From assembly GCA_002811645.1 (NCBI GenBank), contig PDIP01000026.1, positions 196,367 to 260,366 of the forward strand: DNA of 64,000 nt, written 5' to 3'. Below the pieces are notes generated by a model that saw only the letters and a list, made by a program, of their open reading frames with translations, was not told the DNA's origin and made no database searches. Below, one piece after another: positions 1 to 59,180 of this stretch. The DNA comes from Corallochytrium limacisporum Hawaii (Eukaryota > Protista > Pluriformea). Position numbers and translations under genes: made by a program. Numbering within the stretch: the stretch's first letter is position 1; each line of letters begins with the position of its first letter.

Positions 1-3000
1 CTTTACCTCGACCTTTTCCAGTTTAACAACGGGTTCAAACTCCACATCTGGTTCGTAGTCCTCAGCCTTGTCGTCATCTCCGCCACCCGTAGGAGCCTGC
101 GCTGGTGGACCACCAAACATGGGCGCATTGCTCTTTGCTAACGGAGATGCGTTGGTGTTGGCGAACGGGGAGGCATTGGAGGTGGCGAACGGTGATGCAT
201 TGTCACCCGCAGATTTTGCCAAGCTGGCAAAGGAGAATTCACCACCTTGGTTGGACGAGGCAGCCCCAAATGGGCTGCCAGATGCAGAGGTTTGCCCAAA
301 CATAGATGTTTTAGTTCCAACGGCAGACGGTGTCGCAACTGATGAGCTTACGTGAACAGGCTCTACTAACTCGACAGTTCGGTAACTACTGAGGTCTTGA
401 CCATCTTCTTCATCCAACAGACTGATGTGTGCAGTCTTCGCAGCATCCTCATCCTCGTAACAATAGAAGCAAGCAGGCAGTTGATACTGCTTTACATTTT
501 CTACATGTGTGGGATTGGACGTGTTCAGAGAGCGTTGATACGTAATCTCAAGGTCAGAAGATATTCTCTTGGGAGCCTTATCCACGTCGCTCATGCTCAA
601 CTGACTGGTTGTTAAATTGGGCGCAATTGCACCGGTTCCCGATAGATTGCTCGCTGAGGCCTTGACTGCCTCATCAGCAATTGAATTCAGGCCACCATCG
701 TTTTGGTCCATGATGTTCTTGCGCACCACGGCAGGCACGGTTGACTTTTCTAAGTCCTGTACATCATCTTTGCTAAACACGCATCCTTCCCTCCCAAGAT
801 CTGTCGCACCGGATTCAAGAACAGTTGGTTTGCCGGCCACGCAATCATCGAAGGCCTTCTTGAAGGCTTCGCCATCCTCATCCTTCTTAAATCGTATCAT
901 AAACATCTCATCTTCAGGAGCTCCATCGCTAATGTCTCCCATTGCTACCCATTGCCATCTGGTCTTCTGTCCGTCCACCGAGTTCAGAGACATGCCTGCC
1001 ACAATGCTGTGATTGGCACAAAGTTTGAAGACCTGGTCACGGCGCATAACAAAGCGGGTTTTCTTGGTCATGGGATTCCAGAGAATCTTGGCAGGTCCCA
1101 CGCCACGGTCCTTCCACTGCTTCTCTTCCTTGTCAAGGCGGTACAGTTTAGCACGATCAACCTTGAAGAAAATATCCTCGCCTTCTTCACCTGTTTTGAC
1201 CTCAACTTTGTCGAGCTTCACGACTGGCTCAAATTCGACATCAGGTTCGTAATCGTCTGCTTTGTCGTCATCAACACCACCCTGCTCGCATTCAGCGCTA
1301 GGGACTGAAGACCCACCAAAGATTGGCTTGGGGGATCCAGTCAGGCCACTCAAGCCACCACCAGAGGGGGCAGACCAAGCAGCACCGGATGCTGTGGACT
1401 TGGCCATGTCTGCAAAACTGAACGGCTTGGCGGTACCCGATCCAGCTCCGCCAAAAGAGAATCCCTGTCCCTCAGTCTGCAATGGTTTGCTCTCAGATAA
1501 AGTGGCGGGTGCAGCTTTTGCATCAGTCGCAGTTTCCGAGCTGGACTTCGATGGTGACTGCGATGGCACTGTCTCACCCTTGGCACACTTCTCAAAGGTG
1601 TCTTTGAATATTGTGCCATCCTCCTCGGTCTTGAAGCGGAGCATAAATACTTGTTTCTCTGGCTCGCCATCAGCAATGTCGGCCGTGGTTAGCCATGTCA
1701 TCCTAGAGGGATCGGGGCCCATCTGTGAAACGGACATTCCCGGTGAGATGGCATGGTTCGCACACACCTTAAACACTTGGTCCCGCCGCATTACAAAGCG
1801 TATGCGCTGCGACCTGGGATCTCTAAGAATCTTCGCGGGTCCAATTCCACGTTCTTTCCACTGCTTATCCTCCGCTGCATAGCGGAAAAGTTTCGCCTTC
1901 TCAACCGACCAAAGCACTTCTTCGTCTTCCTCGCCGGTCCTGGTCTCAACCTTGTCAAGTTTAACGACGGGTTCAAACTCGACATCAGGCTCATACTCGA
2001 GTCCGTCGTCGTCATCGCCCTCATCATCACTTTTCTGCACTGGCTGGGCGGGAGGAGGATTGTTCTTGTGTTCCTCGTTCTTCTTGGCTAGCTCAGCAAA
2101 GCTAAAACCGACCTGGCCGGTAGATGCCAATGGGATCTTTCCATTGCTTTTGGTAGCATTCACGGCGGCAAATCCTTGAGAAACGCCTCCACCGAACGAC
2201 ATACCAATTGGCTGCGCTGTTGCTGGGGCTCCTGAAGTCTGTCCAGCAGCCGACCCGAAGGCAAACCCTCCAGACTTTGGTGGTGCCCCAAAGATGCTTC
2301 CGCCTGTCGCGCCTCCACCGAAAAGCTGACCACCTTGGTCATTTTTAGCGCTGAATAGTCCTGTAGATGTAGTCGACTGACCACCGAAGATGGGTTTACT
2401 TGATGGTGAGCCGAACGTGAATCCTCCTGCTCTTGCTCCTGTATCCTCATCGTCGACATCTTCGTCTTCCTCGTCGATCTCATCATCGTCCTCTTCATCC
2501 TCATCTTCTTCGTCGTAGTAGTCGTCGTCCTCGTCTTCGTCACTGTCTGCATAAAAGTCCTTGTCCTCATCTTCCTCCTCGTCATCGTCGATCACAACAT
2601 CGTCACCGAACAGCGGTTTACTGGGTTGCCCGAAGGTGAAAGTGTTCCCAGAAGCTTGGGGCATAGTGAAAGTAGGAGTAGTACCAGCCGCTTGCGGAGG
2701 AATATTGAACATACCAGGCCTCGTCGTGGGAACAGCTGCTGGCTGCTGCTGGTCCGCAGGGCGCACTGGCTGTTGTCCAAATTCGGTAGGCTGACCGGTA
2801 CCTGTCCCGGGCTGCGGAGGTTTCTGTCCCATTGGTGTACCCCCAAAGGAGAAATTACCTGCATTGGCACCGAAGGTAGTTTGTACAGGCTGAGCAGGCT
2901 GGGCTGCGATCTGCGGCGTGGTCTCCGCAGGCGGAGCAGGCTGGGCTTGAGGAACACCAAAAACAGGCTTTGATCCTGGGGTCTGCGACGGGAAATCAAG

Positions 3001-5172
3001 TTTGAGACCTTCTTGGTAGGACCCAGTTTCCTTTGTCGGAGCTGCTACTGCTACGGTGTTCGGAGAAGTCAACCGGCTCGGGCTTGGCGCAGGTGCTGGC
3101 TGCCGTGCGCTCTTGAAGACGCGAAGATCATCGGAAAAGTCGTAGTAATGATCTGGGGACTTGACGCCTTTGACCGAAGCGTCATCCTCCAGAAACTTCA
3201 TGAACGGCTCCACTTCTTCAGCTAATAGACGAGGTCGAATTCGGAGAAGTCGGAGAGCTAAATGCCATCCGAAACGGCGGAACGGCTCGGAGTCTTCCGG
3301 ATCCCCAGCATTTCGCAAACGCCTTGCCCTCTGAATAAAGAATCTGCTCACCCAGATTGAGCTCGGGGAGACTTCAGTGTTATCTGATGTTAGGCATCTG
3401 ATCCGCAAGAGTTCACTCTTGACGATCGCATCTCTCATGGGGATTGCCTGTCCATCAAGGATGTGCTGCTCTACGATACAGGACCAGAATTGTTGCACTC
3501 GAGTCGGCAGAGCCACCGGGTGAACCTCACTTGTCTCCTCCTTGTCACAAATGTCATGCAGGCTTGTCCACAGGAATGCTTCCAGGTCATCAATTGAAAC
3601 ATCGTCTGAGGAAGCCCGATCCAAATAGTTGGAGTGGGATGCGACAGCTGGGAAAATGTACTTAAGCAAACTTCGCGTACGGGGGAGCGCCTTGAGCTTG
3701 GAATAGTGTGTTGCCGCCCACACATGATAACTCAAATCCAGCGGAGTGATACCCATGTTTGCAGAGTCAAACAGGGTCAGGTTCTCAACGAAACCCTTGT
3801 CTGTAACACTCCAAACTTGGTCCTCTGTGTTCTCCAAGCTCTTGCAGATGTCCAGTGCTTTGCACATTGTTGGGTCATCAACGTAAGCCCGGAATTTCTT
3901 CATAGCCTCACCAACAGACAAAGAGTCCCCAGCTGGGGCGGAGACTTGCAGAGCGTACTGGATGCAATAGCTCCGACGTGCATCCTGGAATTCTTCCCAG
4001 GCATAGTCCAAGCTCACACCACTCAACAGCCCCGAATCCACCTTAGCTAAGGACTTCAGGAAAGCAGCTGCTCCCTGAACCACTGTGGAAGTCTTTGTGA
4101 GTACCACTGTGCGAATTGCAACGTGCATGGCCAGACGACATTCGAACTCGACGATGATTGCACTCCACCCGATCACGTCATTCATGCGCTTCAGGATTTC
4201 CACATAGTCATCGATAACAATTTCGAACCCGACTTCCTGCGGTTCGGTCCAGTGATGCACCATCGCTGCGCGATCGATACTGAGCAATGCAACGAGTCCA
4301 ATATTTGACACCGTGGCTTGGTCATAGTCTTTCGCATTCAGGGCACCTTTCAGTAGCCGTGCAGCAACCAGGCACCTCTCCAAGCCACGCCAAGTGGGGT
4401 CAGTCAAGAAGAAAGCACCCTTGCTTTTCAATACGGTTTCAACAAGTTTCTTGAAGTTTTCCCCATGAGAATCATCTGCGGAATGGGAGTCAATGAATTT
4501 CAAAATTGCGGGAGAGTTCACCGTCGCAAGCTCACAATCATTTTCCTCGTCCCATGTGCACCCAAGGATACTAGCGATGGACGCAAACATGGTCGGCGAA
4601 ACGGAATGCTGGTCATGATTTGCCAGAGAAGTCTCCAATCTCTCGAGAGCAGCATTTGCTTCGGGGGAGAGCTTCTTGACAGCCTTTGCCTGGTAAACCA
4701 ACAACTCCACATTCGAGGTGGCTGAATTCCGCTTCTCATCTGTAATTTCACCTGAGGTCAAAATACGATACGCTAACTGCAAGGTCGGCTCAAGGCTTGA
4801 AGACTGTCCCAGATTCAATGCGGTCATTCGCGCCTGCAAAGCGTCTGAAAGATTCCCTAGTTTTAAGTGCAAATCCGCCAAACGGGACATTCCTTCCGCG
4901 TCTTCTTTCAACCTGCAGTAGAGCTCCTGACGTTCAAGCGCAGTGGTAAGGTGGCCCACTTCTTCGTAAAGTCGAGAGAAGATTAACGCATACTTAGCTG
5001 CCTGGGGTCCCGACTTGGCACTTCCAATACTCTTTTCGTACCGCTGAACCTCTTCATAACTACGATAGTGCGGTCTGGACCCAAGCTTTGGTGCAGGTGT
5101 TGCCATTGGCCCGTTCTTTGAAGCCGATGTCGGCAGCCCTTTCCGGCCAATGGGCGTCACCGGGACGCCCAT
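1..5172 (-). CDS. RANBP2: RanBP2/Nup358-like nucleoporin, 3' end beyond the window (>1724 aa)
   Basis: Partly translated by hand from ATG at 5172; the track lists no stop-terminated ORF in this frame, consistent with it being open to position 1. N-terminal TPR-like segment YRSYEEVQRYEKSIGSAKSGPQAAKYALIFSRLYEEVGHLTTA, then an acidic block (~2430-2600) and FG repeats (FSFGG, SIFGA, FAFGS). Two complete Ran-binding domains at ~1585-1995 and ~850-1250 (WKERGIGPAKIL..MRRDQVFKVCANH). IR-like motif at ~454-558. A third RanBD starts at ~60. Confidence 0.88.
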   Translation of the reverse strand, partial: MGVPVTPIGRKGLPTSASKNGPMATPAPKLGSRPHYRSYEEVQRYEKSIGSAKSGPQAAKYALIFSRLYEEVGHLTTALERQELYCRLKEDAEGMSRLADLHLKLGNLSDALQARMTALNLGQSSSLEPTLQLAYRILTSGEITDEKRNSATSNVELLVYQAKAVKKLSPEANAALERLETSLANHDQHSVSPTMFASIASILGCTWDEENDCELATVNSPAILKFIDSHSADDSHGENFKKLVETVLKSKGAFFLTDPTWRGLERCLVAARLLKGALNAKDYDQATVSNIGLVALLSIDRAAMVHHWTEPQEVGFEIVIDDYVEILKRMNDVIGWSAIIVEFECRLAMHVAIRTVVLTKTSTVVQGAAAFLKSLAKVDSGLLSGVSLDYAWEEFQDARRSYCIQYALQVSAPAGDSLSVGEAMKKFRAYVDDPTMCKALDICKSLENTEDQVWSVTDKGFVENLTLFDSANMGITPLDLSYHVWAATHYSKLKALPRTRSLLKYIFPAVASHSNYLDRASSDDVSIDDLEAFLWTSLHDICDKEETSEVHPVALPTRVQQFWSCIVEQHILDGQAIPMRDAIVKSELLRIRCLTSDNTEVSPSSIWVSRFFIQRARRLRNAGDPEDSEPFRRFGWHLALRLLRIRPRLLAEEVEPFMKFLEDDASVKGVKSPDHYYDFSDDLRVFKSARQPAPAPSPSRLTSPNTVAVAAPTKETGSYQEGLKLDFPSQTPGSKPVFGVPQAQPAPPAETTPQIAAQPAQPVQTTFGANAGNFSFGGTPMGQKPPQPGTGTGQPTEFGQQPVRPADQQQPAAVPTTRPGMFNIPPQAAGTTPTFTMPQASGNTFTFGQPSKPLFGDDVVIDDDEEEDEDKDFYADSDEDEDDDYYDEEDEDEEDDDEIDEEDEDVDDEDTGARAGGFTFGSPSSKPIFGGQSTTSTGLFSAKNDQGGQLFGGGATGGSIFGAPPKSGGFAFGSAAGQTSGAPATAQPIGMSFGGGVSQGFAAVNATKSNGKIPLASTGQVGFSFAELAKKNEEHKNNPPPAQPVQKSDDEGDDDDGLEYEPDVEFEPVVKLDKVETRTGEEDEEVLWSVEKAKLFRYAAEDKQWKERGIGPAKILRDPRSQRIRFVMRRDQVFKVCANHAISPGMSVSQMGPDPSRMTWLTTADIADGEPEKQVFMLRFKTEEDGTIFKDTFEKCAKGETVPSQSPSKSSSETATDAKAAPATLSESKPLQTEGQGFSFGGAGSGTAKPFSFADMAKSTASGAAWSAPSGGGLSGLTGSPKPIFGGSSVPSAECEQGGVDDDKADDYEPDVEFEPVVKLDKVEVKTGEEGEDIFFKVDRAKLYRLDKEEKQWKDRGVGPAKILWNPMTKKTRFVMRRDQVFKLCANHSIVAGMSLNSVDGQKTRWQWVAMGDISDGAPEDEMFMIRFKKDEDGEAFKKAFDDCVAGKPTVLESGATDLGREGCVFSKDDVQDLEKSTVPAVVRKNIMDQNDGGLNSIADEAVKASASNLSGTGAIAPNLTTSQLSMSDVDKAPKRISSDLEITYQRSLNTSNPTHVENVKQYQLPACFYCYEDEDAAKTAHISLLDEEDGQDLSSYRTVELVEPVHVSSSVATPSAVGTKTSMFGQTSASGSPFGAASSNQGGEFSFASLAKSAGDNASPFATSNASPFANTNASPLAKSNAPMFGGPPAQAPTGGGDDDKAEDYEPDVEFEPVVKLEKVEVK

Positions 5173-5947: not shown

Positions 5948-7453
5948 CTATGTAGAAGATAGAACAGCGGTGATCGTCTTCCCGATGAGGTCGGCAGCGC
6001 GGTGGAGCTCTTCATCCTCGTGCTTGACGGAGAGACAAATGCGGATTGTTGGAATGGTGGCGCCCATCTCTTCGCTGGCAATGTAGCGAGAGCGAGAGAT
6101 GAGAATATTGTGTTGGAGGCGTACATCAGTGACAATCTTGTCAATGATGGCCATGTCCTCTCGCTGGTTCATAGCCGATCGGTTCAATGCCAAGTGGATC
6201 ATGGGTACATCGTTGCTACCCAAGACGCGGACTCCAAATATTTTGCTAATGCGGCTACGGAATTCCCTTGCTTTCAAGCGCAATTCACCAAACATTTCGG
6301 GCGTGTCATTCATAATTGCCAGAGCCCGGATGGCAGTGCATGCAAACATGGGAGGTAGGGACGCAGAGAAGATGTATCCACCTCCCGAAAGGCGCTGATG
6401 ATCGATGACATACGAACTACCAGTCGCAAAACCGCCGATGGATCCCAATGAGCTTTCCGTTCCTGCTACAATGCAATCAATCTTCTCAACCGGTACTTTG
6501 AAATGCTCCGTAACACCGCGACCGGTAGCACCCAGGACACCGAAGGAATGGCTTTCCTCGAGAAATATGCGCACTTTATACTTATCCCGGAATTCGACCA
6601 ACTTGGGCAGAGGACAAATCTCACCAGTGCTCGCGTAGACCCCTTCCACAACCAGAAAGCGGCGAGTCTTGCTCGCCTTGCTGCGGTTTCTCTTATCAGC
6701 CTCAGCCTGCCGTTCCAACAGGCGCTCAAGATCCTGCATGTCATTATGTTTGAAAAACTTGACCTTGGCCTTGGATGCAATCAGACCACGCTGAATAGGG
6801 AAAGACACAGCACTGTCAGCAAACACGATGTCCGTACGCTTTGCATAGGCTGGTATCACAGAGGCAATTGTGGAAAAGCCGTACGAATACAAGATTGATT
6901 CCTCGGTGCCAAAAAATTCCGACAATCTCTGTTCAAGATCAAGATGCACATCAATGGTGCCGTAAAAACCACGAGGCCCACAGGACCCCACACCGTATTT
7001 GCGCAGAGTCTCGACAGCAATCTCTTTCAACTCGTCATCCGCGGAGAAGCCTAGATAGTTGTAGGTTGACAGGTTCAGGCACCTTTTTCCGTCGAGCTCG
7101 GCGTAGATATCTGCAGCTCCTTCCAGAACCAAACCTGCCTGATATGCCGGGTGCTCCACAATTTCATTATGCTCTTCCATGGCTAGCGGTTCTGGCTTCC
7201 ATTCTCTGATCAGCTCCTCCTCTTCTTCCCGGGTTAGTCCTGATCCCTTCGGCTTAGGGGGCGAGTATGGCTTGGCAAATAACAGGTAAATGACCAAGAG
7301 AGCAAGTGAAGCTTCGACCATTACGTGAAAGATGGGCTCAGCGAACATTGTGTCCTCAAAGTATACTTTCATGTTGTCCGCTGCAGGAACTACATCAACA
7401 ATTTTGTGAAAGAGTAATTCCGCAGCATCCTGCAGGGACATGCTCTCAGCCAT
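5948..7453 (-). CDS. SPTLC1: Serine palmitoyltransferase subunit 1 (LCB1)
   Basis: N-terminal TM helix, EEEEELIREWKPEPL, KYGVGSCGPRGFYGTIDVHLDLE, HQRLSGGGYIFSASLPP; no PLP lysine, as expected for LCB1. Likely start is ATG 7453 (MAESM); the track start at 7492 is TTG. Confidence 0.95.
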   Translation of the reverse strand: MAESMSLQDAAELLFHKIVDVVPAADNMKVYFEDTMFAEPIFHVMVEASLALLVIYLLFAKPYSPPKPKGSGLTREEEEELIREWKPEPLAMEEHNEIVEHPAYQAGLVLEGAADIYAELDGKRCLNLSTYNYLGFSADDELKEIAVETLRKYGVGSCGPRGFYGTIDVHLDLEQRLSEFFGTEESILYSYGFSTIASVIPAYAKRTDIVFADSAVSFPIQRGLIASKAKVKFFKHNDMQDLERLLERQAEADKRNRSKASKTRRFLVVEGVYASTGEICPLPKLVEFRDKYKVRIFLEESHSFGVLGATGRGVTEHFKVPVEKIDCIVAGTESSLGSIGGFATGSSYVIDHQRLSGGGYIFSASLPPMFACTAIRALAIMNDTPEMFGELRLKAREFRSRISKIFGVRVLGSNDVPMIHLALNRSAMNQREDMAIIDKIVTDVRLQHNILISRSRYIASEEMGATIPTIRICLSVKHEDEELHRAADLIGKTITAVLSST

Positions 7454-7464
7454 TTTCTCATCTA

Positions 7465-7508
7465 CTAAAGACAACAAATAGAACATACTCAAAGGAGAAT
7501 GGACTCAC
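7465..7508 (-). other. Candidate short 5'-UTR intron of SPTLC1
   Basis: Minus strand GTGAGT (7508) ... pyrimidine-rich ttgttgtctttAG (7465; alternative AG at 7462), just upstream of ATG 7453. Confidence 0.45.
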
Positions 7509-8885: not shown

Positions 8886-11387
8886 ATGCCAGCAAGAGCG
8901 ACGGATTCGAAGACGTTCCTGGAGGATTATGTGCTTGAATATGGCAAAAAATCGTTGCAATCAATCGCAACCTCTTACGAAGACTCAACCTTAGACACAG
9001 CATTCACTAGATTCTTGGTTGCTCAATATTCGGGGCGTCTGAGTGAGCAAGACTTGCTCGAACAATACAAACAGAGTGTGGCTACATGTAGCATAGGAAT
9101 TAGCCAACAGTATGACACAGAACGGGCACGTCAACTTCGAGAAGAATGGAAGTGCTGGCTATTGACCACTAAGCTTAGTAACTGCCTGACAGATCTGGTC
9201 AGTCGGATGCTGAGCGACCACCGAGCACGGCTATCGGAGTTCCGGACACAGAGCGGATACATGCAAATCTTCAATGAAGGTGAAATTATTGCTCTCCTGC
9301 GTGAGTTTGATGACAGACTTGCCATCAATGACGCAATCTGTGACTGGCTGGAAGAGATTCAGTCCAGTGCGCTAACAGGAGACCCGAACCGGAATGTGTA
9401 TGCAACACAGACAACATACGTGGGCTGGGAAAGCACGATCGAAGCGGTGACGACAGCGAGGCGTAGTGGACTAGAGGTTCCCACTCTCAGTCTCATTGCT
9501 GACCTAGACCCTGATGCACCCATCCGGGAAGAGGAAGAGCTGACTGCACAAGATGACATGGAGGAGAAAAGACTGTCCCTTGAATTGTATTCCCTGTTGC
9601 GGCAGGGGCGGCTTAGCGACGCTATTAGTCTCTGCACGGTGGTGCGGCAGTTTTGGAAAGCAGCGATCCTCAAGGGCGGTGAGTGCTACTACGATCGCCA
9701 TCTATTGGCTCTTGGAGATGATGTAATCGACGAGTCCGGATTGGAAGAAGCCATGGGCCGCAATTTGGAGAAGAAACGCATTGTTGAAGGGTCATTCCAC
9801 GGGAACATGCACCGCAGCATCTGGAAGAAGCAGATCTGGAGTGCATCAAATCAAAACAAGATAGATCGGTATGAGAAGGCATTGTACGGCGTACTTTCCG
9901 GCAATTTGGAAGCTGTTTTGCCTGTGTGCGACGGGTGGGATGATGCTCTTTGGGCCAACCTCCGTACGACTTCCGTTCGCATGATCGAGGCAGAGTTGAA
10001 TGACAAGGTGATAGCAAACGACTCTAACTTTATGGACACATCGGATACATTCTCAGGTCTTGAGATTGATTTCAACAATCTGTTTAGCCAGCTGAACAAC
10101 CGCTATGAAACCTCTCATTTTGAAGAGATTCAGGAGGCCCTTGTGTTGTGCCATGCCTTTGTGTACCATGCGGCTCAGAATGGATTACGGGACGGGCAAA
10201 CAAAGGCCATGGGCGTAATTGAGGACTTGTTTGATCGGATCACCCGGAATATGGACGGAATTGGCTCAGAACTTGACATTGTCTTTGGGTCTGATCTCAG
10301 CATCGACTTTCTGACTGTTGACCTACTTCGCTTTTATGTACATCTCCTTATCTATCTGCGTCGCAGCGAATGGCTTTCCAGCCCCGAAGCGCGGCGTGTG
10401 CTGTACGGACCGAAAGCGAATGTTGTCCTCTCCCTCTACATCCGTCGTTTGCTTGAAAGCGGCAACCATCACCTAGTGTTCATGTATGTCGCGCTTATGA
10501 CCGATGACGACGTTAAGACAGCACTGATAACGAATTTCCTGAAGGTGGTTGTGACCTGTGATCTGGAGCGCTACGACAGCACCTCAACCTGGGCACCCTT
10601 CTACGAGCTCGGATCCTATGAGCAGTTGGAAATTCCCATGGACCGCAGCATGTACCGGCTAAATCTTGTTCTACAGAACGACATTCACGGAAGCGGAAGT
10701 GCGGTGAGTGAGTTTGATTTTGATCGCGCCATTGAAGCTCTGCACTGGATTGCCTTTACTGGTAGCGACCCATTGCTGCTCGGCATGGGTAACCGTCTGA
10801 TCCGTGTCTGTCTGCTCGCGGATTACAACTTTGAGGCTGCGACGAAGGCACTTGCTAAAGTTCTTGAGCTCCTGGACAGCGACGGCACTGACGCAGGAGG
10901 CACTGACGCAGACAACACTGAGGCCCTCCGTGCAGAGCTTGCATTCTATACCGGGTTGACCGCAGGGTGGAACGAACTCAACGACCTACATATCAAAATT
11001 GCTGACGGCGGCGCCGAGTATGCGGAGTACTTTGAATCAGACCTGGAAGAATTCGAAAAGCACTTCCGTATTCTGTTCCTCTACGATTGGTGTAAGGCAA
11101 TTGCTCCCTTGAAGGTCGAAGCTGATTTGCGGTGTGACGTGGACCGCGCAGATATCTGGCCCCATATAAGCCGCCAATGGCTGCTCCATCTCACATCCTT
11201 GTACCTTAATGTGGCACCGCATAAGAGCGTCAACGGTACGTGGACCGTGCTTGGCATTATAAATGAGAACCCTGTGGATTCGCAGCTCATGGAGCGGTTA
11301 TTTGACATTCAGTCGGAGGCTGAAGTTTTCCTAGGAACAGCCAGTGAACTGCTCATCAACGGCCTTCCCACAGACGACCTGTCGTAA
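8886..11387 (+). CDS. NUP107: Nuclear pore Y-complex protein Nup107/Nup84
   Basis: 833-aa ORF with LIADLDPDAPIRE, LLRQGRLSDAISLC..QFWKAAILKGG, YEKALYGVLSGNL..C..WDDALWA and LRFYVHL, typical of the Nup84/Nup107 family. Confidence 0.88.
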   Translation: MPARATDSKTFLEDYVLEYGKKSLQSIATSYEDSTLDTAFTRFLVAQYSGRLSEQDLLEQYKQSVATCSIGISQQYDTERARQLREEWKCWLLTTKLSNCLTDLVSRMLSDHRARLSEFRTQSGYMQIFNEGEIIALLREFDDRLAINDAICDWLEEIQSSALTGDPNRNVYATQTTYVGWESTIEAVTTARRSGLEVPTLSLIADLDPDAPIREEEELTAQDDMEEKRLSLELYSLLRQGRLSDAISLCTVVRQFWKAAILKGGECYYDRHLLALGDDVIDESGLEEAMGRNLEKKRIVEGSFHGNMHRSIWKKQIWSASNQNKIDRYEKALYGVLSGNLEAVLPVCDGWDDALWANLRTTSVRMIEAELNDKVIANDSNFMDTSDTFSGLEIDFNNLFSQLNNRYETSHFEEIQEALVLCHAFVYHAAQNGLRDGQTKAMGVIEDLFDRITRNMDGIGSELDIVFGSDLSIDFLTVDLLRFYVHLLIYLRRSEWLSSPEARRVLYGPKANVVLSLYIRRLLESGNHHLVFMYVALMTDDDVKTALITNFLKVVVTCDLERYDSTSTWAPFYELGSYEQLEIPMDRSMYRLNLVLQNDIHGSGSAVSEFDFDRAIEALHWIAFTGSDPLLLGMGNRLIRVCLLADYNFEAATKALAKVLELLDSDGTDAGGTDADNTEALRAELAFYTGLTAGWNELNDLHIKIADGGAEYAEYFESDLEEFEKHFRILFLYDWCKAIAPLKVEADLRCDVDRADIWPHISRQWLLHLTSLYLNVAPHKSVNGTWTVLGIINENPVDSQLMERLFDIQSEAEVFLGTASELLINGLPTDDLS

Positions 11388-11467: not shown

Positions 11468-14400
11468 TTATGCTGCTATAGCACCTCCGCGGTCTCGGTA
11501 TTGCCGTGCAATACTCCTGCCGTGATGGTTGTGTTTTCTTGTCTGCTCCCGATTGCGCAGCCATTCGAGAACGGCTCGATTCATGGCCTGCATGCCATTC
11601 AGGAGGCGTTCCCGTTCGGCGGTGACGGCCAATTTGACTTCCGCTTGCATGCGTTGCTCCATCGCGTTTTCGACGGAACGAATAGTCTCTTGAGAAAGCC
11701 CATTGTTAGCGAGGGCGGATAAATCGACGTTCATTGCCGCGGCCGTCCGCTGCATGGAGTGTGTGACGGTGGCGAGATGAGAGTCCAGCTTGTTCGCCAG
11801 GACACGGGCGATGGAATCCACACCATCTCCGGTGAGGGCACTGGAATCAGGAGGTGATGGTTTCTTCTGTTGTTGTTGCTGTTGCAGTGTCTTACGTTCA
11901 TCTATCGCCTGCTGCATAGCCTGTCGGACCTGACTGTCCACCTCCTGCAGCGTACGTTGGAGGTCCCTGAATGCGTCGGCAGTGGTCGGAATGTGTCGGA
12001 GGACCTCCATGAGCTTGGCACTGTGTTCATCTCGTACGTGTGTTAGGACCTTGAGCTGATGTGCATTCTCACCGCGCAGCCCTCTCACGGATGCCACAGC
12101 CTTGCGTTGGTCCATCAACGACTCCTGTAGCTGCTCCATTGTGGCAAGCATACGCTTCTGTTTTGCTGTCCCTTGTCTGAGTTTGTCATTTGTGCGGCCA
12201 AGCTTGGTGACGGAGTCCCGATACTGATCGGACAGCTCGGAAAGTTCATTGCGGAGCACATGGCAAGTCATGCACGCCTCCTTGTCTTCGAACCTGTCAG
12301 TTACGAGGAGCACTTCATCTGTCTGCGTGCCACGGACATACTGCTGCACACCAATGGTCTGCGTGGCTGCCCAATTTTGCTGATTGTGGCGGCGCTCGGC
12401 CATGTCTTTGGATACTTGTGCAAAAAATGGCGCCCAGTCCTTGTGGCATAGTTGGTGGTGCAGGACGCAACTCTTCTCCAACACCACGTCCTCGGATGAT
12501 CCAATCTGCTCTTGGAACAGGTTGATCAGATCGGCTTGCAAGTTTTGGAACTCCTGGTGCAGGCGCTGACTGTTCTCCACATTCGCGTTGGTAAGCTGCG
12601 CGACGCTTTCATGGATGGCGCCTTCCTGAAGCTGGTGCAGGCGGGCAATTTCCTGCTGGTGAGCCGAACGCAGGTCTTCCAGCTGCTTGATGTGGTTTGC
12701 AGCCATCTGCTTCAATTCGCTCTCTCGCTGCTGCAGCTGCTGGGGCTCCCTTTCTATAGTGCTTTGCTTCTCCACCAGAACATTCTCCAACCGAGCAATC
12801 TCTGCCTTCAGCACAGCCTGCTGCTTTTCGTTTCTACTTTGCAAGACGTCAATCTCTGCCTTGTGTTTCTCAGTGAGACTGTCGGAGCCCTCCTGCTCCT
12901 CTTCTAGCATTTTGCTAATTTTCAGGTACTCCTTTTTCACGTCGGACACTTCAAGGACGGCGCGATGGTACTTCTGTTCCCACTCCCACACACCGCCCTC
13001 ACTGGCCTTTTCGATCAACTCGTCACGGACCTTTTCCAGTTTAGCAATATCCTTCAGCAAGCCATCTGCGTAAGCATCTTTTTCCGTGATGACTCCTCGG
13101 GCCAGATCCAATTCACCCTGAAGATGTGCAAAGGCCTGATGAAGGTCATTAATCTCCTCCTCCATTGCTTTATGTACCTCGGGATCCACGATCATGTCTC
13201 CGGACACCAAAGTTTCGATGTTCTGGTCCACCTTATTGACCACATTGCCGTCAACCTGGCCCACATCAATGCCAACCTGAACTGCCTGACTTTCCTGAAC
13301 AACAGACGGTTTCACAGTCACCGTGTGACTACCTTGCTTAAGATGACGCAGTGCCTCCAGTAGCGCCGATTCCATGCAACAGACATTGATGTCACTGTCT
13401 TGCATGGCAGAAGAGTCTGTATCATTCACATACTTCTGCCAGAGTTCACGAACCGCCTTGCCGTTTGGACACTTGCACGTATTAAGCGCTCGTTGTTGTG
13501 ATAAGAGATCCATTGACTCCCTGAGCAGGCCGCATTCCCGGTATGCCTCGTCCAGATCCTGTTGCATATCGCTAATCATGGTCTGTAGTACCGTGTTTGT
13601 GCGGTTGCTCTCTTGCAAACTATCTCGAAGTTTGTTGAGGGCATCAGGGTCCGCATTTTCGTCGTTGATGATGGAAACCATTGCCTCTGATCCGCGTCCA
13701 TCTAGGATCGCTTGGATGTTCTGTGTATACATCTGATCCTTTGTCTCTAGCATTCGTGATAGGGCTGACACCTTGGCTTCGAGATCGGCACGCTCATTCT
13801 GCCACTTATGGCGAGCGCTGGTGAAATCCGTGCGTAGCGTCTCGACATCGCGTTCGGACCCGTACCGCTTGAGTTCTGCATTTTCCTGCTGTGTTGTTTC
13901 CAGTGCTACAGTGTACTCAACGACCTGTTCCTTTTTCCGTTCCACCTCTACATGCAAACTCTTAATCTGGGCCTCGAGGTCGTCGATCTTTGTCTCGAGA
14001 CGAACCTCATTAGTTTGCGCGTCACTCTCACGAGTCTCAAGTTCGTGGATCCTTTGCGTGGCAACCTCCAATTTCTCCAAGAAATGCCGTACCTGTTCGC
14101 TATGTTCACTCTTGAGTGTGTGCACATCCTGGTTGAGCTTTGCTGATCTCTCCCGCTCAGCTTCTAAGAGTACCCGGAGTTCGCGCGCATCCTCGCTTTC
14201 ATTACTGTACTTGAGGAGTGCGGTGGAAGATGCAAACTCAGGAGGCCGACGTTTGGGACTGGTGTCTGTTTGTACAACAGGTAGAATCCGTGTCGTTTCA
14301 TCAATGTTATCCGCGTCTGATTCCAAATCATCGTCATCGTCATCTTCAAACACCGCGTGGGCGTCATTCAGCAAGATCTCAATTTCCCGCGTCAGCTCCG

Positions 14401-14554
14401 CCCGACGATCCTGATTGTCGACGTCTGATACATCGCTGTTGTTGTCGTACTGAATATTGTCTAGTTTGCTGACGTCGATTTCCTGTGCCCATTCATCGGG
14501 ATCCTGTCCGGCCCGCGTTGATGACGCCACTTCTGCTTGAACGGGGTGAGGCAT
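11468..14554 (-). CDS. CEP152: Long coiled-coil protein, CEP152/Asterless-like centriole duplication factor
   Basis: 1028 aa. N-terminal DNQDRRAELTREIEILLNDAHAVFEDDDDD resembles the Plk4-binding acidic helix of CEP152/Asl. ELRVLLEAERER and EVRLETKIDDLEAQIKSL..VALETTQQENAELKR resemble CEP152 coiled-coil 1. C-terminal EVKLAVTAERERLLNGM resembles the conserved CEP152 C-terminal block. CDS is secure; orthology is moderate. Confidence 0.65.
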   Translation of the reverse strand: MPHPVQAEVASSTRAGQDPDEWAQEIDVSKLDNIQYDNNSDVSDVDNQDRRAELTREIEILLNDAHAVFEDDDDDDLESDADNIDETTRILPVVQTDTSPKRRPPEFASSTALLKYSNESEDARELRVLLEAERERSAKLNQDVHTLKSEHSEQVRHFLEKLEVATQRIHELETRESDAQTNEVRLETKIDDLEAQIKSLHVEVERKKEQVVEYTVALETTQQENAELKRYGSERDVETLRTDFTSARHKWQNERADLEAKVSALSRMLETKDQMYTQNIQAILDGRGSEAMVSIINDENADPDALNKLRDSLQESNRTNTVLQTMISDMQQDLDEAYRECGLLRESMDLLSQQRALNTCKCPNGKAVRELWQKYVNDTDSSAMQDSDINVCCMESALLEALRHLKQGSHTVTVKPSVVQESQAVQVGIDVGQVDGNVVNKVDQNIETLVSGDMIVDPEVHKAMEEEINDLHQAFAHLQGELDLARGVITEKDAYADGLLKDIAKLEKVRDELIEKASEGGVWEWEQKYHRAVLEVSDVKKEYLKISKMLEEEQEGSDSLTEKHKAEIDVLQSRNEKQQAVLKAEIARLENVLVEKQSTIEREPQQLQQRESELKQMAANHIKQLEDLRSAHQQEIARLHQLQEGAIHESVAQLTNANVENSQRLHQEFQNLQADLINLFQEQIGSSEDVVLEKSCVLHHQLCHKDWAPFFAQVSKDMAERRHNQQNWAATQTIGVQQYVRGTQTDEVLLVTDRFEDKEACMTCHVLRNELSELSDQYRDSVTKLGRTNDKLRQGTAKQKRMLATMEQLQESLMDQRKAVASVRGLRGENAHQLKVLTHVRDEHSAKLMEVLRHIPTTADAFRDLQRTLQEVDSQVRQAMQQAIDERKTLQQQQQQKKPSPPDSSALTGDGVDSIARVLANKLDSHLATVTHSMQRTAAAMNVDLSALANNGLSQETIRSVENAMEQRMQAEVKLAVTAERERLLNGMQAMNRAVLEWLRNREQTRKHNHHGRSIARQYRDRGGAIAA

Positions 14555-19204: not shown

Positions 19205-19410
19205 NNNNNNNNNNNNNNNNNNNNNNNNNNNNNNNNNNNNNNNNNNNNNNNNNNNNNNNNNNNNNNNNNNNNNNNNNNNNNNNNNNNNNNNNNNNNNNNN
19301 NNNNNNNNNNNNNNNNNNNNNNNNNNNNNNNNNNNNNNNNNNNNNNNNNNNNNNNNNNNNNNNNNNNNNNNNNNNNNNNNNNNNNNNNNNNNNNNNNNNN
19401 NNNNNNNNNN
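19205..19410. other. Assembly gap
   Basis: N run flanked by (CA)n and poly-G. Confidence 1.
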
Positions 19411-49140: not shown

Positions 49141-49293
49141 NNNNNNNNNNNNNNNNNNNNNNNNNNNNNNNNNNNNNNNNNNNNNNNNNNNNNNNNNNNN
49201 NNNNNNNNNNNNNNNNNNNNNNNNNNNNNNNNNNNNNNNNNNNNNNNNNNNNNNNNNNNNNNNNNNNNNNNNNNNNNNNNNNNNNNNNGCACG

Positions 49294-51097: not shown

Positions 51098-51182
51098 NNN
51101 NNNNNNNNNNNNNNNNNNNNNNNNNNNNNNNNNNNNNNNNNNNNNNNNNNNNNNNNNNNNNNNNNNNNNNNNNNNNNNNNNN

Positions 51183-52827: not shown

Positions 52828-53070
52828 NNNNNNNNNNNNNNNNNNNNNNNNNNNNNNNNNNNNNNNNNNNNNNNNNNNNNNNNNNNNNNNNNNNNNNNNN
52901 NNNNNNNNNNNNNNNNNNNNNNNNNNNNNNNNNNNNNNNNNNNNNNNNNNNNNNNNNNNNNNNNNNNNNNNNNNNNNNNNNNNNNNNNNNNNNNNNNNNN
53001 NNNNNNNNNNNNNNNNNNNNNNNNNNNNNNNNNNNNNNNNNNNNNNNNNNNNNNNNNNNNNNNNNNNNNN
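52828..53070. other. Assembly gap
   Basis: N run; left edge abuts the hairpin ggggccgc-t-gcggcccc (52810-52826). Confidence 1.
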
Positions 53071-58969: not shown

Positions 58970-59180
58970 TTCCCCTCGTCCTCCCCCCCCCCCGGGGGGG
59001 GAGGAGGACNNNNNNNNNNNNNNNNNNNNNNNNNNNNNNNNNNNNNNNNNNNNNNNNNNNNNNNNNNNNNNNNNNNNNNNNNNNNNNNNNNNNNNNNNNN
59101 NNNNNNNNNNNNNNNNNNNNNNNNNNNNNNNNNNNNNNNNNNNNCCCCCCCCCCCCCGGGGGGGGAGGAGGACGAGGGAA
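58970..59180. repeat. GC-rich inverted repeat duplicated across gap 59010-59144
   Basis: ttcccctcgtcct(c)n(g)naggaggac left of the gap and (c)n(g)naggaggacgagggaa right of it. Confidence 0.8.

What the first reader, a model, noticed from the sequence alone, without database searches (positions are those of the whole stretch)
1..5172. Full-architecture RanBP2/Nup358, including a SUMO-E3 IR motif, missed by the ORF track
Seen: one minus-strand frame encodes a Nup358-like TPR N-terminus, FG repeats, at least 3 RanBDs and SDLEITYQRSLNTSNPTHVENVKQYQLPACFYCYE (~454-558). No zinc fingers lie between RanBD1 and RanBD2. Known: the RanBP2 IR1 element (DVLIVYE...LKLPPTFFCY) is its SUMO E3 module, and Nup358 is usually described as metazoan-specific, with a ZnF array between RBD1 and RBD2. 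Inference: if the host is a unicellular holozoan, the Nup358 filament with SUMO-ligase activity predates animals, here in a ZnF-less, single-IR form.
Basis: partly seen in the sequence, partly recalled or inferred. Interest (0 to 1): 0.8.

Follow-up and report, generated by a model that had tools for sequence, protein, structure and literature searches.

The report
Pre-animal Nup358 nuclear pore protein
A single-celled relative of animals, Corallochytrium, encodes a giant nuclear-pore filament protein of the Nup358/RanBP2 type, usually called animal-only, with a probable docking site for the SUMO-attaching enzyme; the gene was already listed in a 2024 data table, but I found no description of its animal-like head domain or its SUMO site.

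Summary
Window 1-5172 (-) is one stop-free frame of 1724 codons. It continues past a 1332-nt assembly gap to a stop 364 codons further on, about 2530 aa in all.

The host is Corallochytrium limacisporum, because the frame equals EukProt Clim_evm65s142. The gene is very probably Clim_g2610, which Shah et al. 2024 list as "Nup358/RanBP2". The scan also noted its C-terminal part on the adjacent piece (s1-569213).

- **Head domain.** It is homologous to the Nup358 N-terminal domain (hhalign 95%, E 2.8e-8; all leading PDB hits are Nup358).
- **Architecture.** Head domain, FG repeats, an acidic block and probably five Ran-binding domains. No RanBP2 zinc fingers are visible and there is no cyclophilin.
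- **IR-like peptide (window 445-561).** Pfam IR1-M misses it. A profile of animal IR elements finds it as the only six-frame hit in the 24-Mb genome (18.6 bits, E 0.04; 0 of 3000 shuffles).
- **Support from a relative.** The ichthyosporean Chromosphaera perkinsii homologue has the same head domain and an unambiguous IR element (38 bits, E 5e-14).

Nup358 with an IR element therefore predates animals. SUMO-ligase activity is inferred, not shown. Ubc9 is present, but no RanGAP1 C-terminal domain was found.

The parts
1..5172 (-). First 1724 codons of the Nup358/RanBP2-like gene. The start codon is at 5170-5172. The frame runs off the window's left edge into an assembly gap.
   Evidence: Stop-free translation. 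An upstream in-frame stop lies 4 codons before the ATG. Residues 1-1722 are identical to EukProt Clim_evm65s142.
3160..5082 (-). N-terminal alpha-solenoid (aa 31-671), homologous to the Nup358 N-terminal domain.
   Evidence: The nine best PDB phmmer hits are all Nup358, best E 4e-4, colinear in two blocks. hhalign against animal NTDs gives 93%, E 3.5e-7, 577 columns. With ichthyosporeans added it gives 95.2%, E 2.8e-8. The alignment-informed AF2 model has pLDDT 61.5, and its top 25 Foldseek hits are all Nup358 NTD chains; this is partly circular.
2590..3012 (-). FG-repeat region 1 (aa 721-861).
   Evidence: FG/FxFG positions.
2443..2604 (-). 54-residue acidic block (aa 857-910). It opens with a second SIM-like motif, DDVVIDDDEEE, at window 2572-2604.
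   Evidence: Read from the translation. The function was not tested.
2023..2436 (-). FG-repeat region 2 (aa 913-1050).
   Evidence: FG positions.
1579..1998 (-). RanBD1 with its acidic leader.
   Evidence: Pfam Ran_BP1, 133.5 bits, at G000:C171:197945-198310. The leader is at window 1945-1998.
1273..1467 (-). FG-repeat linker 3. There are no zinc fingers between RanBD1 and RanBD2.
   Evidence: Motif and cysteine scan.
838..1272 (-). RanBD2 with its leader.
   Evidence: Pfam Ran_BP1, 139.7 bits, at G000:C171:197204-197569.
445..561 (-). IR-like element (aa 1538-1576): a SIM-like DLEITY, a short helix-prone stretch, then LPACFYCYEDED.
   Evidence: It is the only six-frame hit in the 24.1-Mb genome to the animal IR profile A4 (18.6 bits, E 0.041, window 445-492). 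A local search gives 13.6 bits, and 0 of 3000 shuffles exceed 4.3 bits. The whole element aligns to animal IRs with one 3-residue insertion. Pfam IR1-M gives no hit.
76..375 (-). FG-repeat linker 4 (aa 1600-1699).
   Evidence: FG positions.
1..75 (-). Leader and first residues of RanBD3, cut by the assembly gap.
   Evidence: Translation. It is almost identical to the RanBD2 leader. Contigs show that the gap hides the rest of RanBD3, a linker of about 155 aa and most of RanBD4.

Best explanation
This is the Corallochytrium limacisporum orthologue of the cytoplasmic-filament nucleoporin Nup358/RanBP2, in a form without zinc fingers or a cyclophilin domain.

Shown:
- One unspliced open frame of about 2530 aa.
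- Its order is N-terminal alpha-solenoid homologous to the Nup358 NTD, FG repeats, an acidic block, RanBD1, FG, RanBD2, an IR-like element, FG, RanBD3, a hidden linker, RanBD4, FG, RanBD5, stop.

Inferred from the animal protein:
- The solenoid anchors the protein on the cytoplasmic outer ring of the pore.
- The FG repeats bind transport receptors.
- The RanBDs capture Ran-GTP on exported complexes so that they are taken apart at the pore.

Inferred with about 45% confidence: the IR-like element docks SUMO through DLEITY and Ubc9 through LPACFYCY. It would then act as a SUMO E3 or as a SUMO-Ubc9 tether at the pore.

The clear Nup358 homologue with an unambiguous IR element in Chromosphaera perkinsii places the family, IR included, before the origin of animals. 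The RanBP2 zinc-finger array and the cyclophilin domain, seen here only in animal homologues, would then be later additions.
For: - Frame and extension.
- Host and gene identity: the frame is 100% identical to EukProt Clim_evm65s142. The gene order Nup358-like / aminotransferase / Nup107 fits Clim_g2610-g2612 of Shah et al. 2024.
- NTD homology: PDB phmmer; a profile of animal NTDs, 22.6 bits; hhalign 93% and 95.2%; the named Atlas cluster at or above 0.90 is RanBP2-like; Foldseek on the alignment-informed model.
- RanBDs.
- IR element.
- Ichthyosporean bridge: P0153 (Nk52_evm14s273) and P0024 match the animal-only NTD profile at 88 and 92 bits. P0153 has 5 RanBDs, no zinc fingers and an IR of 38 bits. 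Pfam IR1-M is P0153's top family at 19.9 bits.
- A Ubc9 orthologue is present, E 3e-75, and there are Rad60-SLD (SUMO/ubiquitin-like) hits.
- Probable expression: contigs of two RNA-like runs cover the ORF and break just outside it, while DNA contigs run on.
Against: - NTD identity to animal Nup358 is only about 15-23%. Single-sequence searches of 1.8 and 5.8 billion proteins found only the protein itself. The single-sequence AF2 model was useless, with pLDDT 40.
- The oligomerisation element that follows the animal NTD is not aligned.
- The three complete RanBDs form one clade, 100/99. Their number therefore says nothing about one-to-one orthology with animal RanBD1-4.
- The IR is weak: Pfam misses it, only 16 of 41 profile positions align without gaps, the genome-wide E is 0.04, and the nearly invariant Ala of the helix is Val.
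- The IR sits between RanBD2 and RanBD3, whereas the ichthyosporean element is C-terminal.
- No RanGAP1_C domain and no clear RanGAP were found.
- 444 codons are hidden in the gap.
Confidence: 0.8

Rival explanations
1. The protein is a Nup358 orthologue, but the IR-like peptide is not a SUMO E3 or Ubc9 dock. It would be a chance resemblance or a degenerate relic, or it would bind something else such as RanGAP directly (as the fly's 23-residue site does) or an exportin.
For: Pfam IR1-M gives no hit. The vertebrate-only profile gives 7 bits and no genome-wide hit. Only the LPxxFYxYE half aligns without gaps. The SIM-like core LEIT is weakly hydrophobic. No RanGAP1_C was found. Fly Nup358 is reported to lack an E3 domain and to bind RanGAP by another short peptide (PMC9067512).
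Against: It is the single genome-wide hit of the animal IR profile, and it falls inside the one gene where it is expected. No shuffle out of 3000 reaches it. The SIM-like part lies at the right distance but for a 3-residue insertion. A close match, QLPxxFYxYE, is part of an unambiguous IR in C. perkinsii.
Confidence: 0.45
2. It is a convergent multi-RanBD FG nucleoporin, with a generic TPR solenoid fused to a RanBP1-type domain that duplicated locally. On this reading it is not an orthologue of Nup358.
For: The RanBDs form a lineage-specific clade. There are no Pfam TPR or Nup358 hits on the NTD. Sequence identity is low.
Against: The nine best PDB hits are all Nup358, with the first non-Nup358 chain at E 0.8, and there are two colinear blocks in the same register in dozens of species. 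hhalign aligns 444-577 colinear columns starting at residue 3 of the animal protein. The ichthyosporean proteins bridge to animals at 88-92 bits. Generic TPR proteins fall at TM below 0.2 in Foldseek.
Confidence: 0.07
3. It is an assembly or annotation artefact, or a dead gene. The long frame would be a misjoin across repeats, or would not be expressed.
For: A 1332-nt gap interrupts the gene. The EukProt model jumps it and so fuses two different RanBDs.
Against: There are 2088 visible codons without a stop, and the same frame holds on both sides of the gap. Independent runs from three studies hold the stretch. A 554-nt contig present in all four runs explains the gap as one more RanBD repeat. 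Contigs of the RNA-like runs cover the whole visible ORF.
Confidence: 0.03

Closest known systems
Vertebrate Nup358/RanBP2 (human 7MNL and 1Z5S; Xenopus 6LK8 and 7VOP)
   Same: The N-terminal solenoid is homologous over about 450-580 columns. Both have FG repeats between multiple RanBDs, and an IR-type element in a linker flanked by FG repeats and RanBDs.
   Different: The Corallochytrium protein has no RanBP2-type zinc-finger array, no C-terminal cyclophilin and no recognisable oligomerisation element. It probably has five RanBDs rather than four, and they are homogenised among themselves. It has one weak IR-like element between RanBD2 and RanBD3, instead of IR1-M-IR2 between RanBD3 and RanBD4, and it carries a 54-residue acidic block. 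NTD identity is about 20%.
Chromosphaera perkinsii Nk52_evm14s273 (P0153) and the related metagenomic protein P0024
   Same: Both come from unicellular holozoan lineages. Both have a Nup358-type NTD, FG repeats and five RanBDs that cluster within the species, with no zinc fingers and no cyclophilin. The IR core is QLPxxFYxYE.
   Different: The ichthyosporean NTD is much closer to animals (88-92 bits against 22.6). Its IR is complete (38 bits) and lies at the extreme C-terminus, followed by a Cys-rich tail. The Corallochytrium protein ends 10 residues after its last RanBD.
Invertebrate Nup358 (spider P0034, crayfish P0039, tick P0009, jellyfish P0032/P0135)
   Same: The IR elements are of the LPxxF[FY]xYE type rather than the vertebrate LPPTFFC type. 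The crayfish core LPDNFYLYED is the closest to LPACFYCYEDED.
   Different: The arthropod and unnamed invertebrate-type proteins have zinc fingers and a CPGCRGC motif right after the IR (the jellyfish IR copies lack it). Their RanBDs show position-specific orthology.
Drosophila Nup358
   Same: It is a Nup358 said to lack the vertebrate E3 domain, and it has no cyclophilin-dependent functions.
   Different: It is reported to tether RanGAP through a 23-residue peptide not found in vertebrates (PMC9067512). I did not examine the fly sequence here.

Membership tests
Nup358/RanBP2 | N-terminal alpha-solenoid homologous to the Nup358 NTD (TPR plus helical domain, human residues 1-752) | tested here: met
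   The nine best PDB phmmer hits are all Nup358. hhalign gives 93% with E 3.5e-7 and 95.2% with E 2.8e-8. On the alignment-informed model, the top 25 Foldseek hits are Nup358 (partly circular).
Nup358/RanBP2 | Several RanBP1-type Ran-binding domains separated by FG repeats | tested here: met
   Three Pfam Ran_BP1 matches lie over the cut-off in one open frame. There are also a cut leader and a cut end, and contigs imply five domains. The window part holds 18 FG dipeptides.
Nup358/RanBP2 | Oligomerisation element (short coiled coil) after the NTD | tested here: inconclusive
   The profile alignments stop at Corallochytrium residue 537-671 and do not reach the animal element. Nothing comparable was seen in aa 672-720.
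Nup358/RanBP2 | Array of RanBP2-type zinc fingers between RanBD1 and RanBD2 | tested here: not met
   There is no zinc-finger pattern and no Pfam zf-RanBP hit in the 2088 visible residues. The two ichthyosporean proteins also lack it. The 444 hidden codons are probably RanBD repeats plus a linker of about 155 aa.
Nup358/RanBP2 | C-terminal cyclophilin domain | tested here: not met
   The stop lies 10 residues after the last RanBD, and the C-terminal 364 aa give no Pro_isomerase hit.
Nup358/RanBP2 | Location on the cytoplasmic outer ring of the pore, bound to the Y-complex | not testable with these tools
   This needs tagging or imaging in Corallochytrium.
IR1-M SUMO E3 module (PF12185) | Match to the Pfam IR1-M model at its gathering score | tested here: not met
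   There is no hit at E up to 10 on the protein, on the 150-aa segment or on the genome. For comparison, the scores are zebrafish 77.7, crayfish 31.4, jellyfish 25.1, spider 22.3 and C. perkinsii 19.9 bits.
IR1-M SUMO E3 module (PF12185) | End of motif II and the start of the UBC9-wrapping part: the LPxxFF core (assignment to numbered motifs is my reading) | tested here: met
   Profile A4 aligns positions 23-38 to aa 1561-1576. This is the only genome-wide hit, at 18.6 bits and E 0.041. The local score is 13.6 bits, against a shuffle maximum of 4.3.
IR1-M SUMO E3 module (PF12185) | Motif I: a SIM at a fixed distance upstream | tested here: inconclusive
   DLEITY, preceded by SS-D, aligns with the animal D-V-x-I-V-Y only if a 3-residue insertion is allowed. 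HMMER leaves it out of the local alignment.
IR1-M SUMO E3 module (PF12185) | Partners: Ubc9, SUMO, and RanGAP1 with its C-terminal SUMO-acceptor domain | tested here: inconclusive
   Ubc9 is present, E 3e-75, and there are Rad60-SLD (SUMO/ubiquitin-like) hits. RanGAP1_C (PF07834) and a RanGAP orthologue were not found.
IR1-M SUMO E3 module (PF12185) | SUMO E3 activity, or protection of a SUMO-Ubc9 complex | not testable with these tools
   This is a biochemical assay. No complex prediction was available.

The most novel reading that the evidence does not exclude
The whole Nup358 design arose in the holozoan stem, before Ichthyosporea, Corallochytrea and animals split. That design is the pore-anchoring solenoid, the FG repeats, multiple RanBDs and a working SUMO-Ubc9 docking or E3 element. 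The element works in these protists without a RanGAP1 C-terminal domain. If so, 'IR1-M is an animal or chordate invention' and 'Nup358 is metazoan-specific' are both wrong, and the SUMO E3 role came before the RanGAP1 tether.
Probability: 0.4. Interest if true: 0.65.

Novelty: new member of a known kind. Interest (0 to 1): 0.5.

Why it matters
Structural papers on the pore call Nup358 "metazoan-specific" and treat it as the animal device that doubles the cytoplasmic Y-complex ring (PMC6006428; bioRxiv 2021.10.26.465790). Surveys of ubiquitin-like systems date IR1-M to animals or chordates (PMC4327156, PMC11354881).

This work shows a true Nup358 head domain and an IR-type element in two early-branching unicellular holozoan lineages. 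That moves the origin of both to before animals. It also separates them from the zinc fingers and the cyclophilin, which were seen here only in animal homologues.

Corallochytrium can be transfected. Its mitosis and pores have already been imaged, as have those of Chromosphaera. Two questions therefore become testable: whether a pre-animal Nup358 builds a double outer ring, and whether it recruits Ubc9-SUMO.

The finding is incremental. The gene is already in a published presence/absence table, though that table's row is loose, because it also holds an accession (NP_013439.1) in the S. pombe column that I take to be yeast Nup2.

Tried and rejected
1. Pfam on the whole protein and on segments gave only Ran_BP1.
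2. A word-index search with the NTD and full HMMER of the NTD against 1.84 billion representatives both returned only the protein itself.
3. The single-sequence AF2 model of the NTD had pLDDT 40 and was not used.
4. A PDB phmmer search with the IR segment found nothing relevant.
5. The vertebrate-only IR profile gave no genome-wide hit. My first regex required Cys after FF, so it wrongly suggested that invertebrates lack IR. This was corrected by the profile search.
6. The RanGAP1_C hit at C285 is a TAO-type kinase coiled coil.
7. The RanGAP candidates at C201, C132, C143, C192, C96 and C173 are LRRC45-like, CARMIL-like or RI-type LRR proteins.
8. I considered that the gap might hide a fused RanGAP, as in P0018. 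I rejected this because contigs leave only about 466 nt of non-RanBD sequence.
9. hhalign of the NTD against the two ichthyosporeans alone gave only a 61-column local match at 40%.
10. The Atlas feature search gave weak leads only.
11. PMC11166264 (Chen et al. 2021) is not held.

The pieces on either side of the gap were always searched apart and never joined. The joined EukProt model P0001 was used only for comparison.
Full report
**The sequence.** The minus strand of window 1-5172 translates into 1724 codons without a stop. The first codon is ATG at 5170-5172, and an in-frame stop lies four codons upstream. The ORF list does not show the frame because it runs off the window's left edge. The window is G000:C171:196367-260366 in a 24.1-Mb assembly of 286 contigs.

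Directly to the left lies a run of 1332 N (C171:195035-196366). After it the same frame continues for 364 codons. These hold the end of a RanBD, FG repeats, a last RanBD and a stop ten residues later. There is no cyclophilin domain.

**The run of N is an assembly gap.** I read it as a gap rather than anything else, for four reasons:
- The public gene model jumps it.
- The window itself holds five other N runs.
- The neighbouring scan piece begins right after it.
- The contigs of the source DNA runs break at the repeat borders on both sides.

I never joined the two pieces. They were searched apart.

**Host and prior record.** The NTD search returned one protein, EukProt Clim_evm65s142 (P0001), identical over residues 1-1722. 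That model then skips to the last 360 residues, so it fuses the start of one RanBD to the end of another. The host is therefore Corallochytrium limacisporum, a unicellular holozoan, as earlier notes of this scan had suggested.

Upstream of the gene lie an aminotransferase (5948-7492, -) and Nup107 (8886-11387, +). Shah et al. 2024 (PMC11153136, source data) list Clim_g2610 as "Nup358/RanBP2" and Clim_g2612 as Nup107. This gene is therefore very probably Clim_g2610.

That table row is loose. It holds an accession (NP_013439.1) in the S. pombe column that I take, from memory, to be S. cerevisiae Nup2. It also marks presence in a chytrid and two amoebozoans, so it seems to track any RanBD nucleoporin.

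Neumann et al. 2010 (PMC2951903) already ticked Nup358 for Monosiga. Even so, structural papers call Nup358 metazoan-specific, and surveys date IR1-M to animals or chordates.

**The N-terminal domain.** Three direct searches of aa 1-720 gave nothing useful:
- Pfam finds nothing.
- HMMER against 1.84 billion representatives finds only the protein itself.
- A single-sequence AF2 model is useless, with pLDDT 40.

The evidence for homology comes from more sensitive comparisons:
- In the PDB the nine best phmmer hits are all Nup358, best E 4e-4. They share two colinear blocks, Corallochytrium 37-139 with Nup358 3-106 and 463-549 with 417-507. The same register recurs in dozens of vertebrate proteins.
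- A profile of vertebrate and chelicerate NTDs scores 22.6 bits.
- hhalign against 20 NTDs gives 93%, E 3.5e-7, over 577 colinear columns. A set that includes two ichthyosporeans gives 95.2%, E 2.8e-8.
- An AF2 model informed by that alignment reaches pLDDT 61.5. Its first 25 Foldseek hits are Nup358 NTD chains (E 1.6e-10 to 4e-4, TM 0.42-0.50, and 0.65 against 7MNJ). Generic TPR proteins follow at TM below 0.2. This last test is partly circular, because the alignment consisted of Nup358 sequences.

The oligomerisation element behind the animal NTD is not matched.

**The rest of the architecture.** After the NTD come FG repeats and a 54-residue acidic block that opens with a SIM-like DDVVIDDDEEE. 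Then follow more FG repeats, RanBD1, FG, RanBD2, the IR-like linker, FG and the leader of RanBD3. No zinc-finger pattern occurs anywhere in the visible sequence.

Contigs of four public runs were laid across the gap. In all four, a 554-nt contig joins a RanBD end, 466 unknown letters and a RanBD leader. The gap must therefore hide the rest of RanBD3, a linker of about 155 aa and most of RanBD4. By my estimate this is about 1.2 kb, close to the 1332 N, and it gives five RanBDs in all. It leaves no room for a RanGAP domain.

In two runs that look like transcriptomes, contigs of 5250 and 5226 nt run from the repeat border to about 100-120 nt upstream of the ATG. Another contig ends 45 nt past the stop. 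DNA contigs run on across both borders. This suggests an expressed, unspliced mRNA, but contigs cannot prove transcript ends.

In a tree, the three complete RanBDs form one clade (100/99), as do the four of P0024. Arthropod and vertebrate domains instead group by position. The Corallochytrium domains were therefore duplicated or homogenised within the lineage.

**The IR-like element.** Pfam IR1-M does not match the protein, the segment or the genome. A profile of vertebrate IR1 and IR2 gives only 7 bits and no genome-wide hit.

That same profile, however, found IR elements in non-vertebrate Nup358s: the named ones are jellyfish, spider, tick and crayfish, plus several unnamed, presumably invertebrate, proteins from ENA assemblies. 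These have the core LPxxF[FY]xYE instead of LPPTFFC. Pfam confirms several of them when the segments are scanned alone.

I then built a profile of 34 animal elements (A4) and ran it in six frames over the whole 24.1-Mb genome:
- It returns a single hit, window 445-492 (-), at 18.6 bits and E 0.041, inside this gene.
- Locally the protein scores 13.6 bits, and none of 3000 shuffles exceeds 4.3.
- Only the LPACFYCYEDED half aligns without gaps.
- With one 3-residue insertion, MAFFT also aligns DLEITY with the animal SIM.

According to Gareau et al. 2012 (PMC3281653), motif I (the SIM) and motif II are the parts critical for E3 activity.

**The ichthyosporean bridge.** P0024 is a metagenomic protein without zinc fingers that has four modelled RanBDs. 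Its NTD pulled out Nk52_evm14s273 (P0153) at 38% identity. P0153 is the protein that Shah et al. list as the Nup358/RanBP2 of Chromosphaera perkinsii.
- Both proteins match the animal-only NTD profile, at 92 and 88 bits.
- P0153 has five RanBDs and no zinc fingers.
- P0153 carries a full-length IR element at residues 2998-3034. It scores 38 bits, E 5e-14, against the animal-only profile. Pfam IR1-M is its top family at 19.9 bits, under the cut-off.
- The P0024 contig continues in another frame into a fifth RanBD and the start of an IR, cut by the contig's end.

The C. perkinsii core QLPKGFYLYE is very like the Corallochytrium QLPACFYCYE. Nup358 with an IR element therefore exists in a second unicellular holozoan lineage. 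This makes chance a poor explanation for the Corallochytrium peptide. It remains the weakest copy, and it sits in a different linker.

**Partners.** A Ubc9 orthologue is present (E 3e-75 to human UBC9), and so are hits to the Rad60-SLD (SUMO/ubiquitin-like) model. The RanGAP1 C-terminal domain was not found. The single weak hit is a kinase coiled coil.

A search with an animal-type RanGAP domain found only generic LRR proteins. The same query does find fission-yeast Rna1 at 1e-44. I cannot say whether RanGAP is missing from the assembly or very divergent. A vertebrate-style RanGAP1-SUMO-Ubc9 complex is therefore not supported, and a plain Ubc9-SUMO dock or E3 remains possible.

**Verdict.** The protein is an orthologue of Nup358/RanBP2 (confidence about 0.8), in a form that lacks the RanBP2 zinc fingers and the cyclophilin domain. 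Among the proteins examined here, only animal homologues carry zinc fingers, so these parts were probably added in animals. The IR-like element is probably homologous to the animal IR; its function as a SUMO-Ubc9 dock or E3 is inferred (about 0.45).

The presence of the gene was already recorded in a published table. In what I could search, I found no description of three things: the homology of its head domain, the IR elements in unicellular holozoans, and the five-RanBD structure hidden by the gap.

Noticed in passing
L013 (P0018), also P0015 and P0095: These are natural Nup358-RanGAP1 fusions. P0018 is 2592 aa with a Nup358 NTD, four RanBDs and one zinc finger. Between RanBD3 and RanBD4 it has a complete RanGAP1 domain (E 1.7e-115 to PDB 9b62_G). 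The cluster has 21 and 27 members from ENA and JGI assemblies. Its RanBDs group with arthropods. It has no IR element, as if fusion had replaced the SUMO tether.
   Followed up: partly
whole genome G000: The six-frame searches found no RanGAP orthologue and no RanGAP1_C domain, although RanGAP is expected in every eukaryote. The best hits are generic RI-type LRR proteins.
   Followed up: partly
window 5948-7492 (-) and 8886-11387 (+): A class I/II aminotransferase (SPTLC1-like) and Nup107 lie next to the Nup358-like gene. Two nucleoporin genes therefore sit within 4 kb of each other. This order let me tie the gene to Clim_g2610 and Clim_g2612.
   Followed up: partly
P0001 (EukProt Clim_evm65s142), residues 1722/1723: The public gene model treats the assembly gap as an intron. 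It joins the first residues of RanBD3 to the last residues of RanBD4, which gives a chimeric, broken domain and a protein about 450 aa too short.
   Followed up: yes
L012:10951-11934 (contig of P0024): The called gene ends early. Another frame continues with a fifth RanBD and the start of an IR element, cut by the contig's end. The cause is probably a frameshift or a short intron in the metagenomic contig.
   Followed up: partly
P0009, P0012, P0017, P0019, P0020, P0022, P0025, P0028, P0034, P0036, P0039, P0059, P0071, P0078, P0082 (arthropod and unnamed invertebrate-type IR elements); P0153:3035-3047: In the named arthropod proteins and in several unnamed ENA proteins, the IR elements are followed at once by a conserved C-P-G-C-R-G-C motif. 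The C. perkinsii element is followed by C-E-C-C. Vertebrates, the jellyfish copies and Corallochytrium lack this. It may be a small metal-binding knuckle attached to the IR.
   Followed up: no
window 2443-2604 (-): This is a 54-residue run made almost entirely of Asp and Glu inside the FG region. It is headed by a canonical-looking SIM (VVID followed by acidic residues). It may be a second SUMO-binding site.
   Followed up: no
L044 (window 1-2434), run X4: One of the RNA-like runs differs from the assembly at 14 positions in 2.4 kb of this gene, so it probably comes from another strain. None of the differences falls in the IR-like element.
   Followed up: partly
window 11468-14554 (-): This 1028-aa ORF has no Pfam match.
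   Followed up: no
window 19205-19410, 49141-49288, 51098-51182, 52828-53070, 59010-59144: There are five further runs of N (assembly gaps) inside the window.
   Followed up: no
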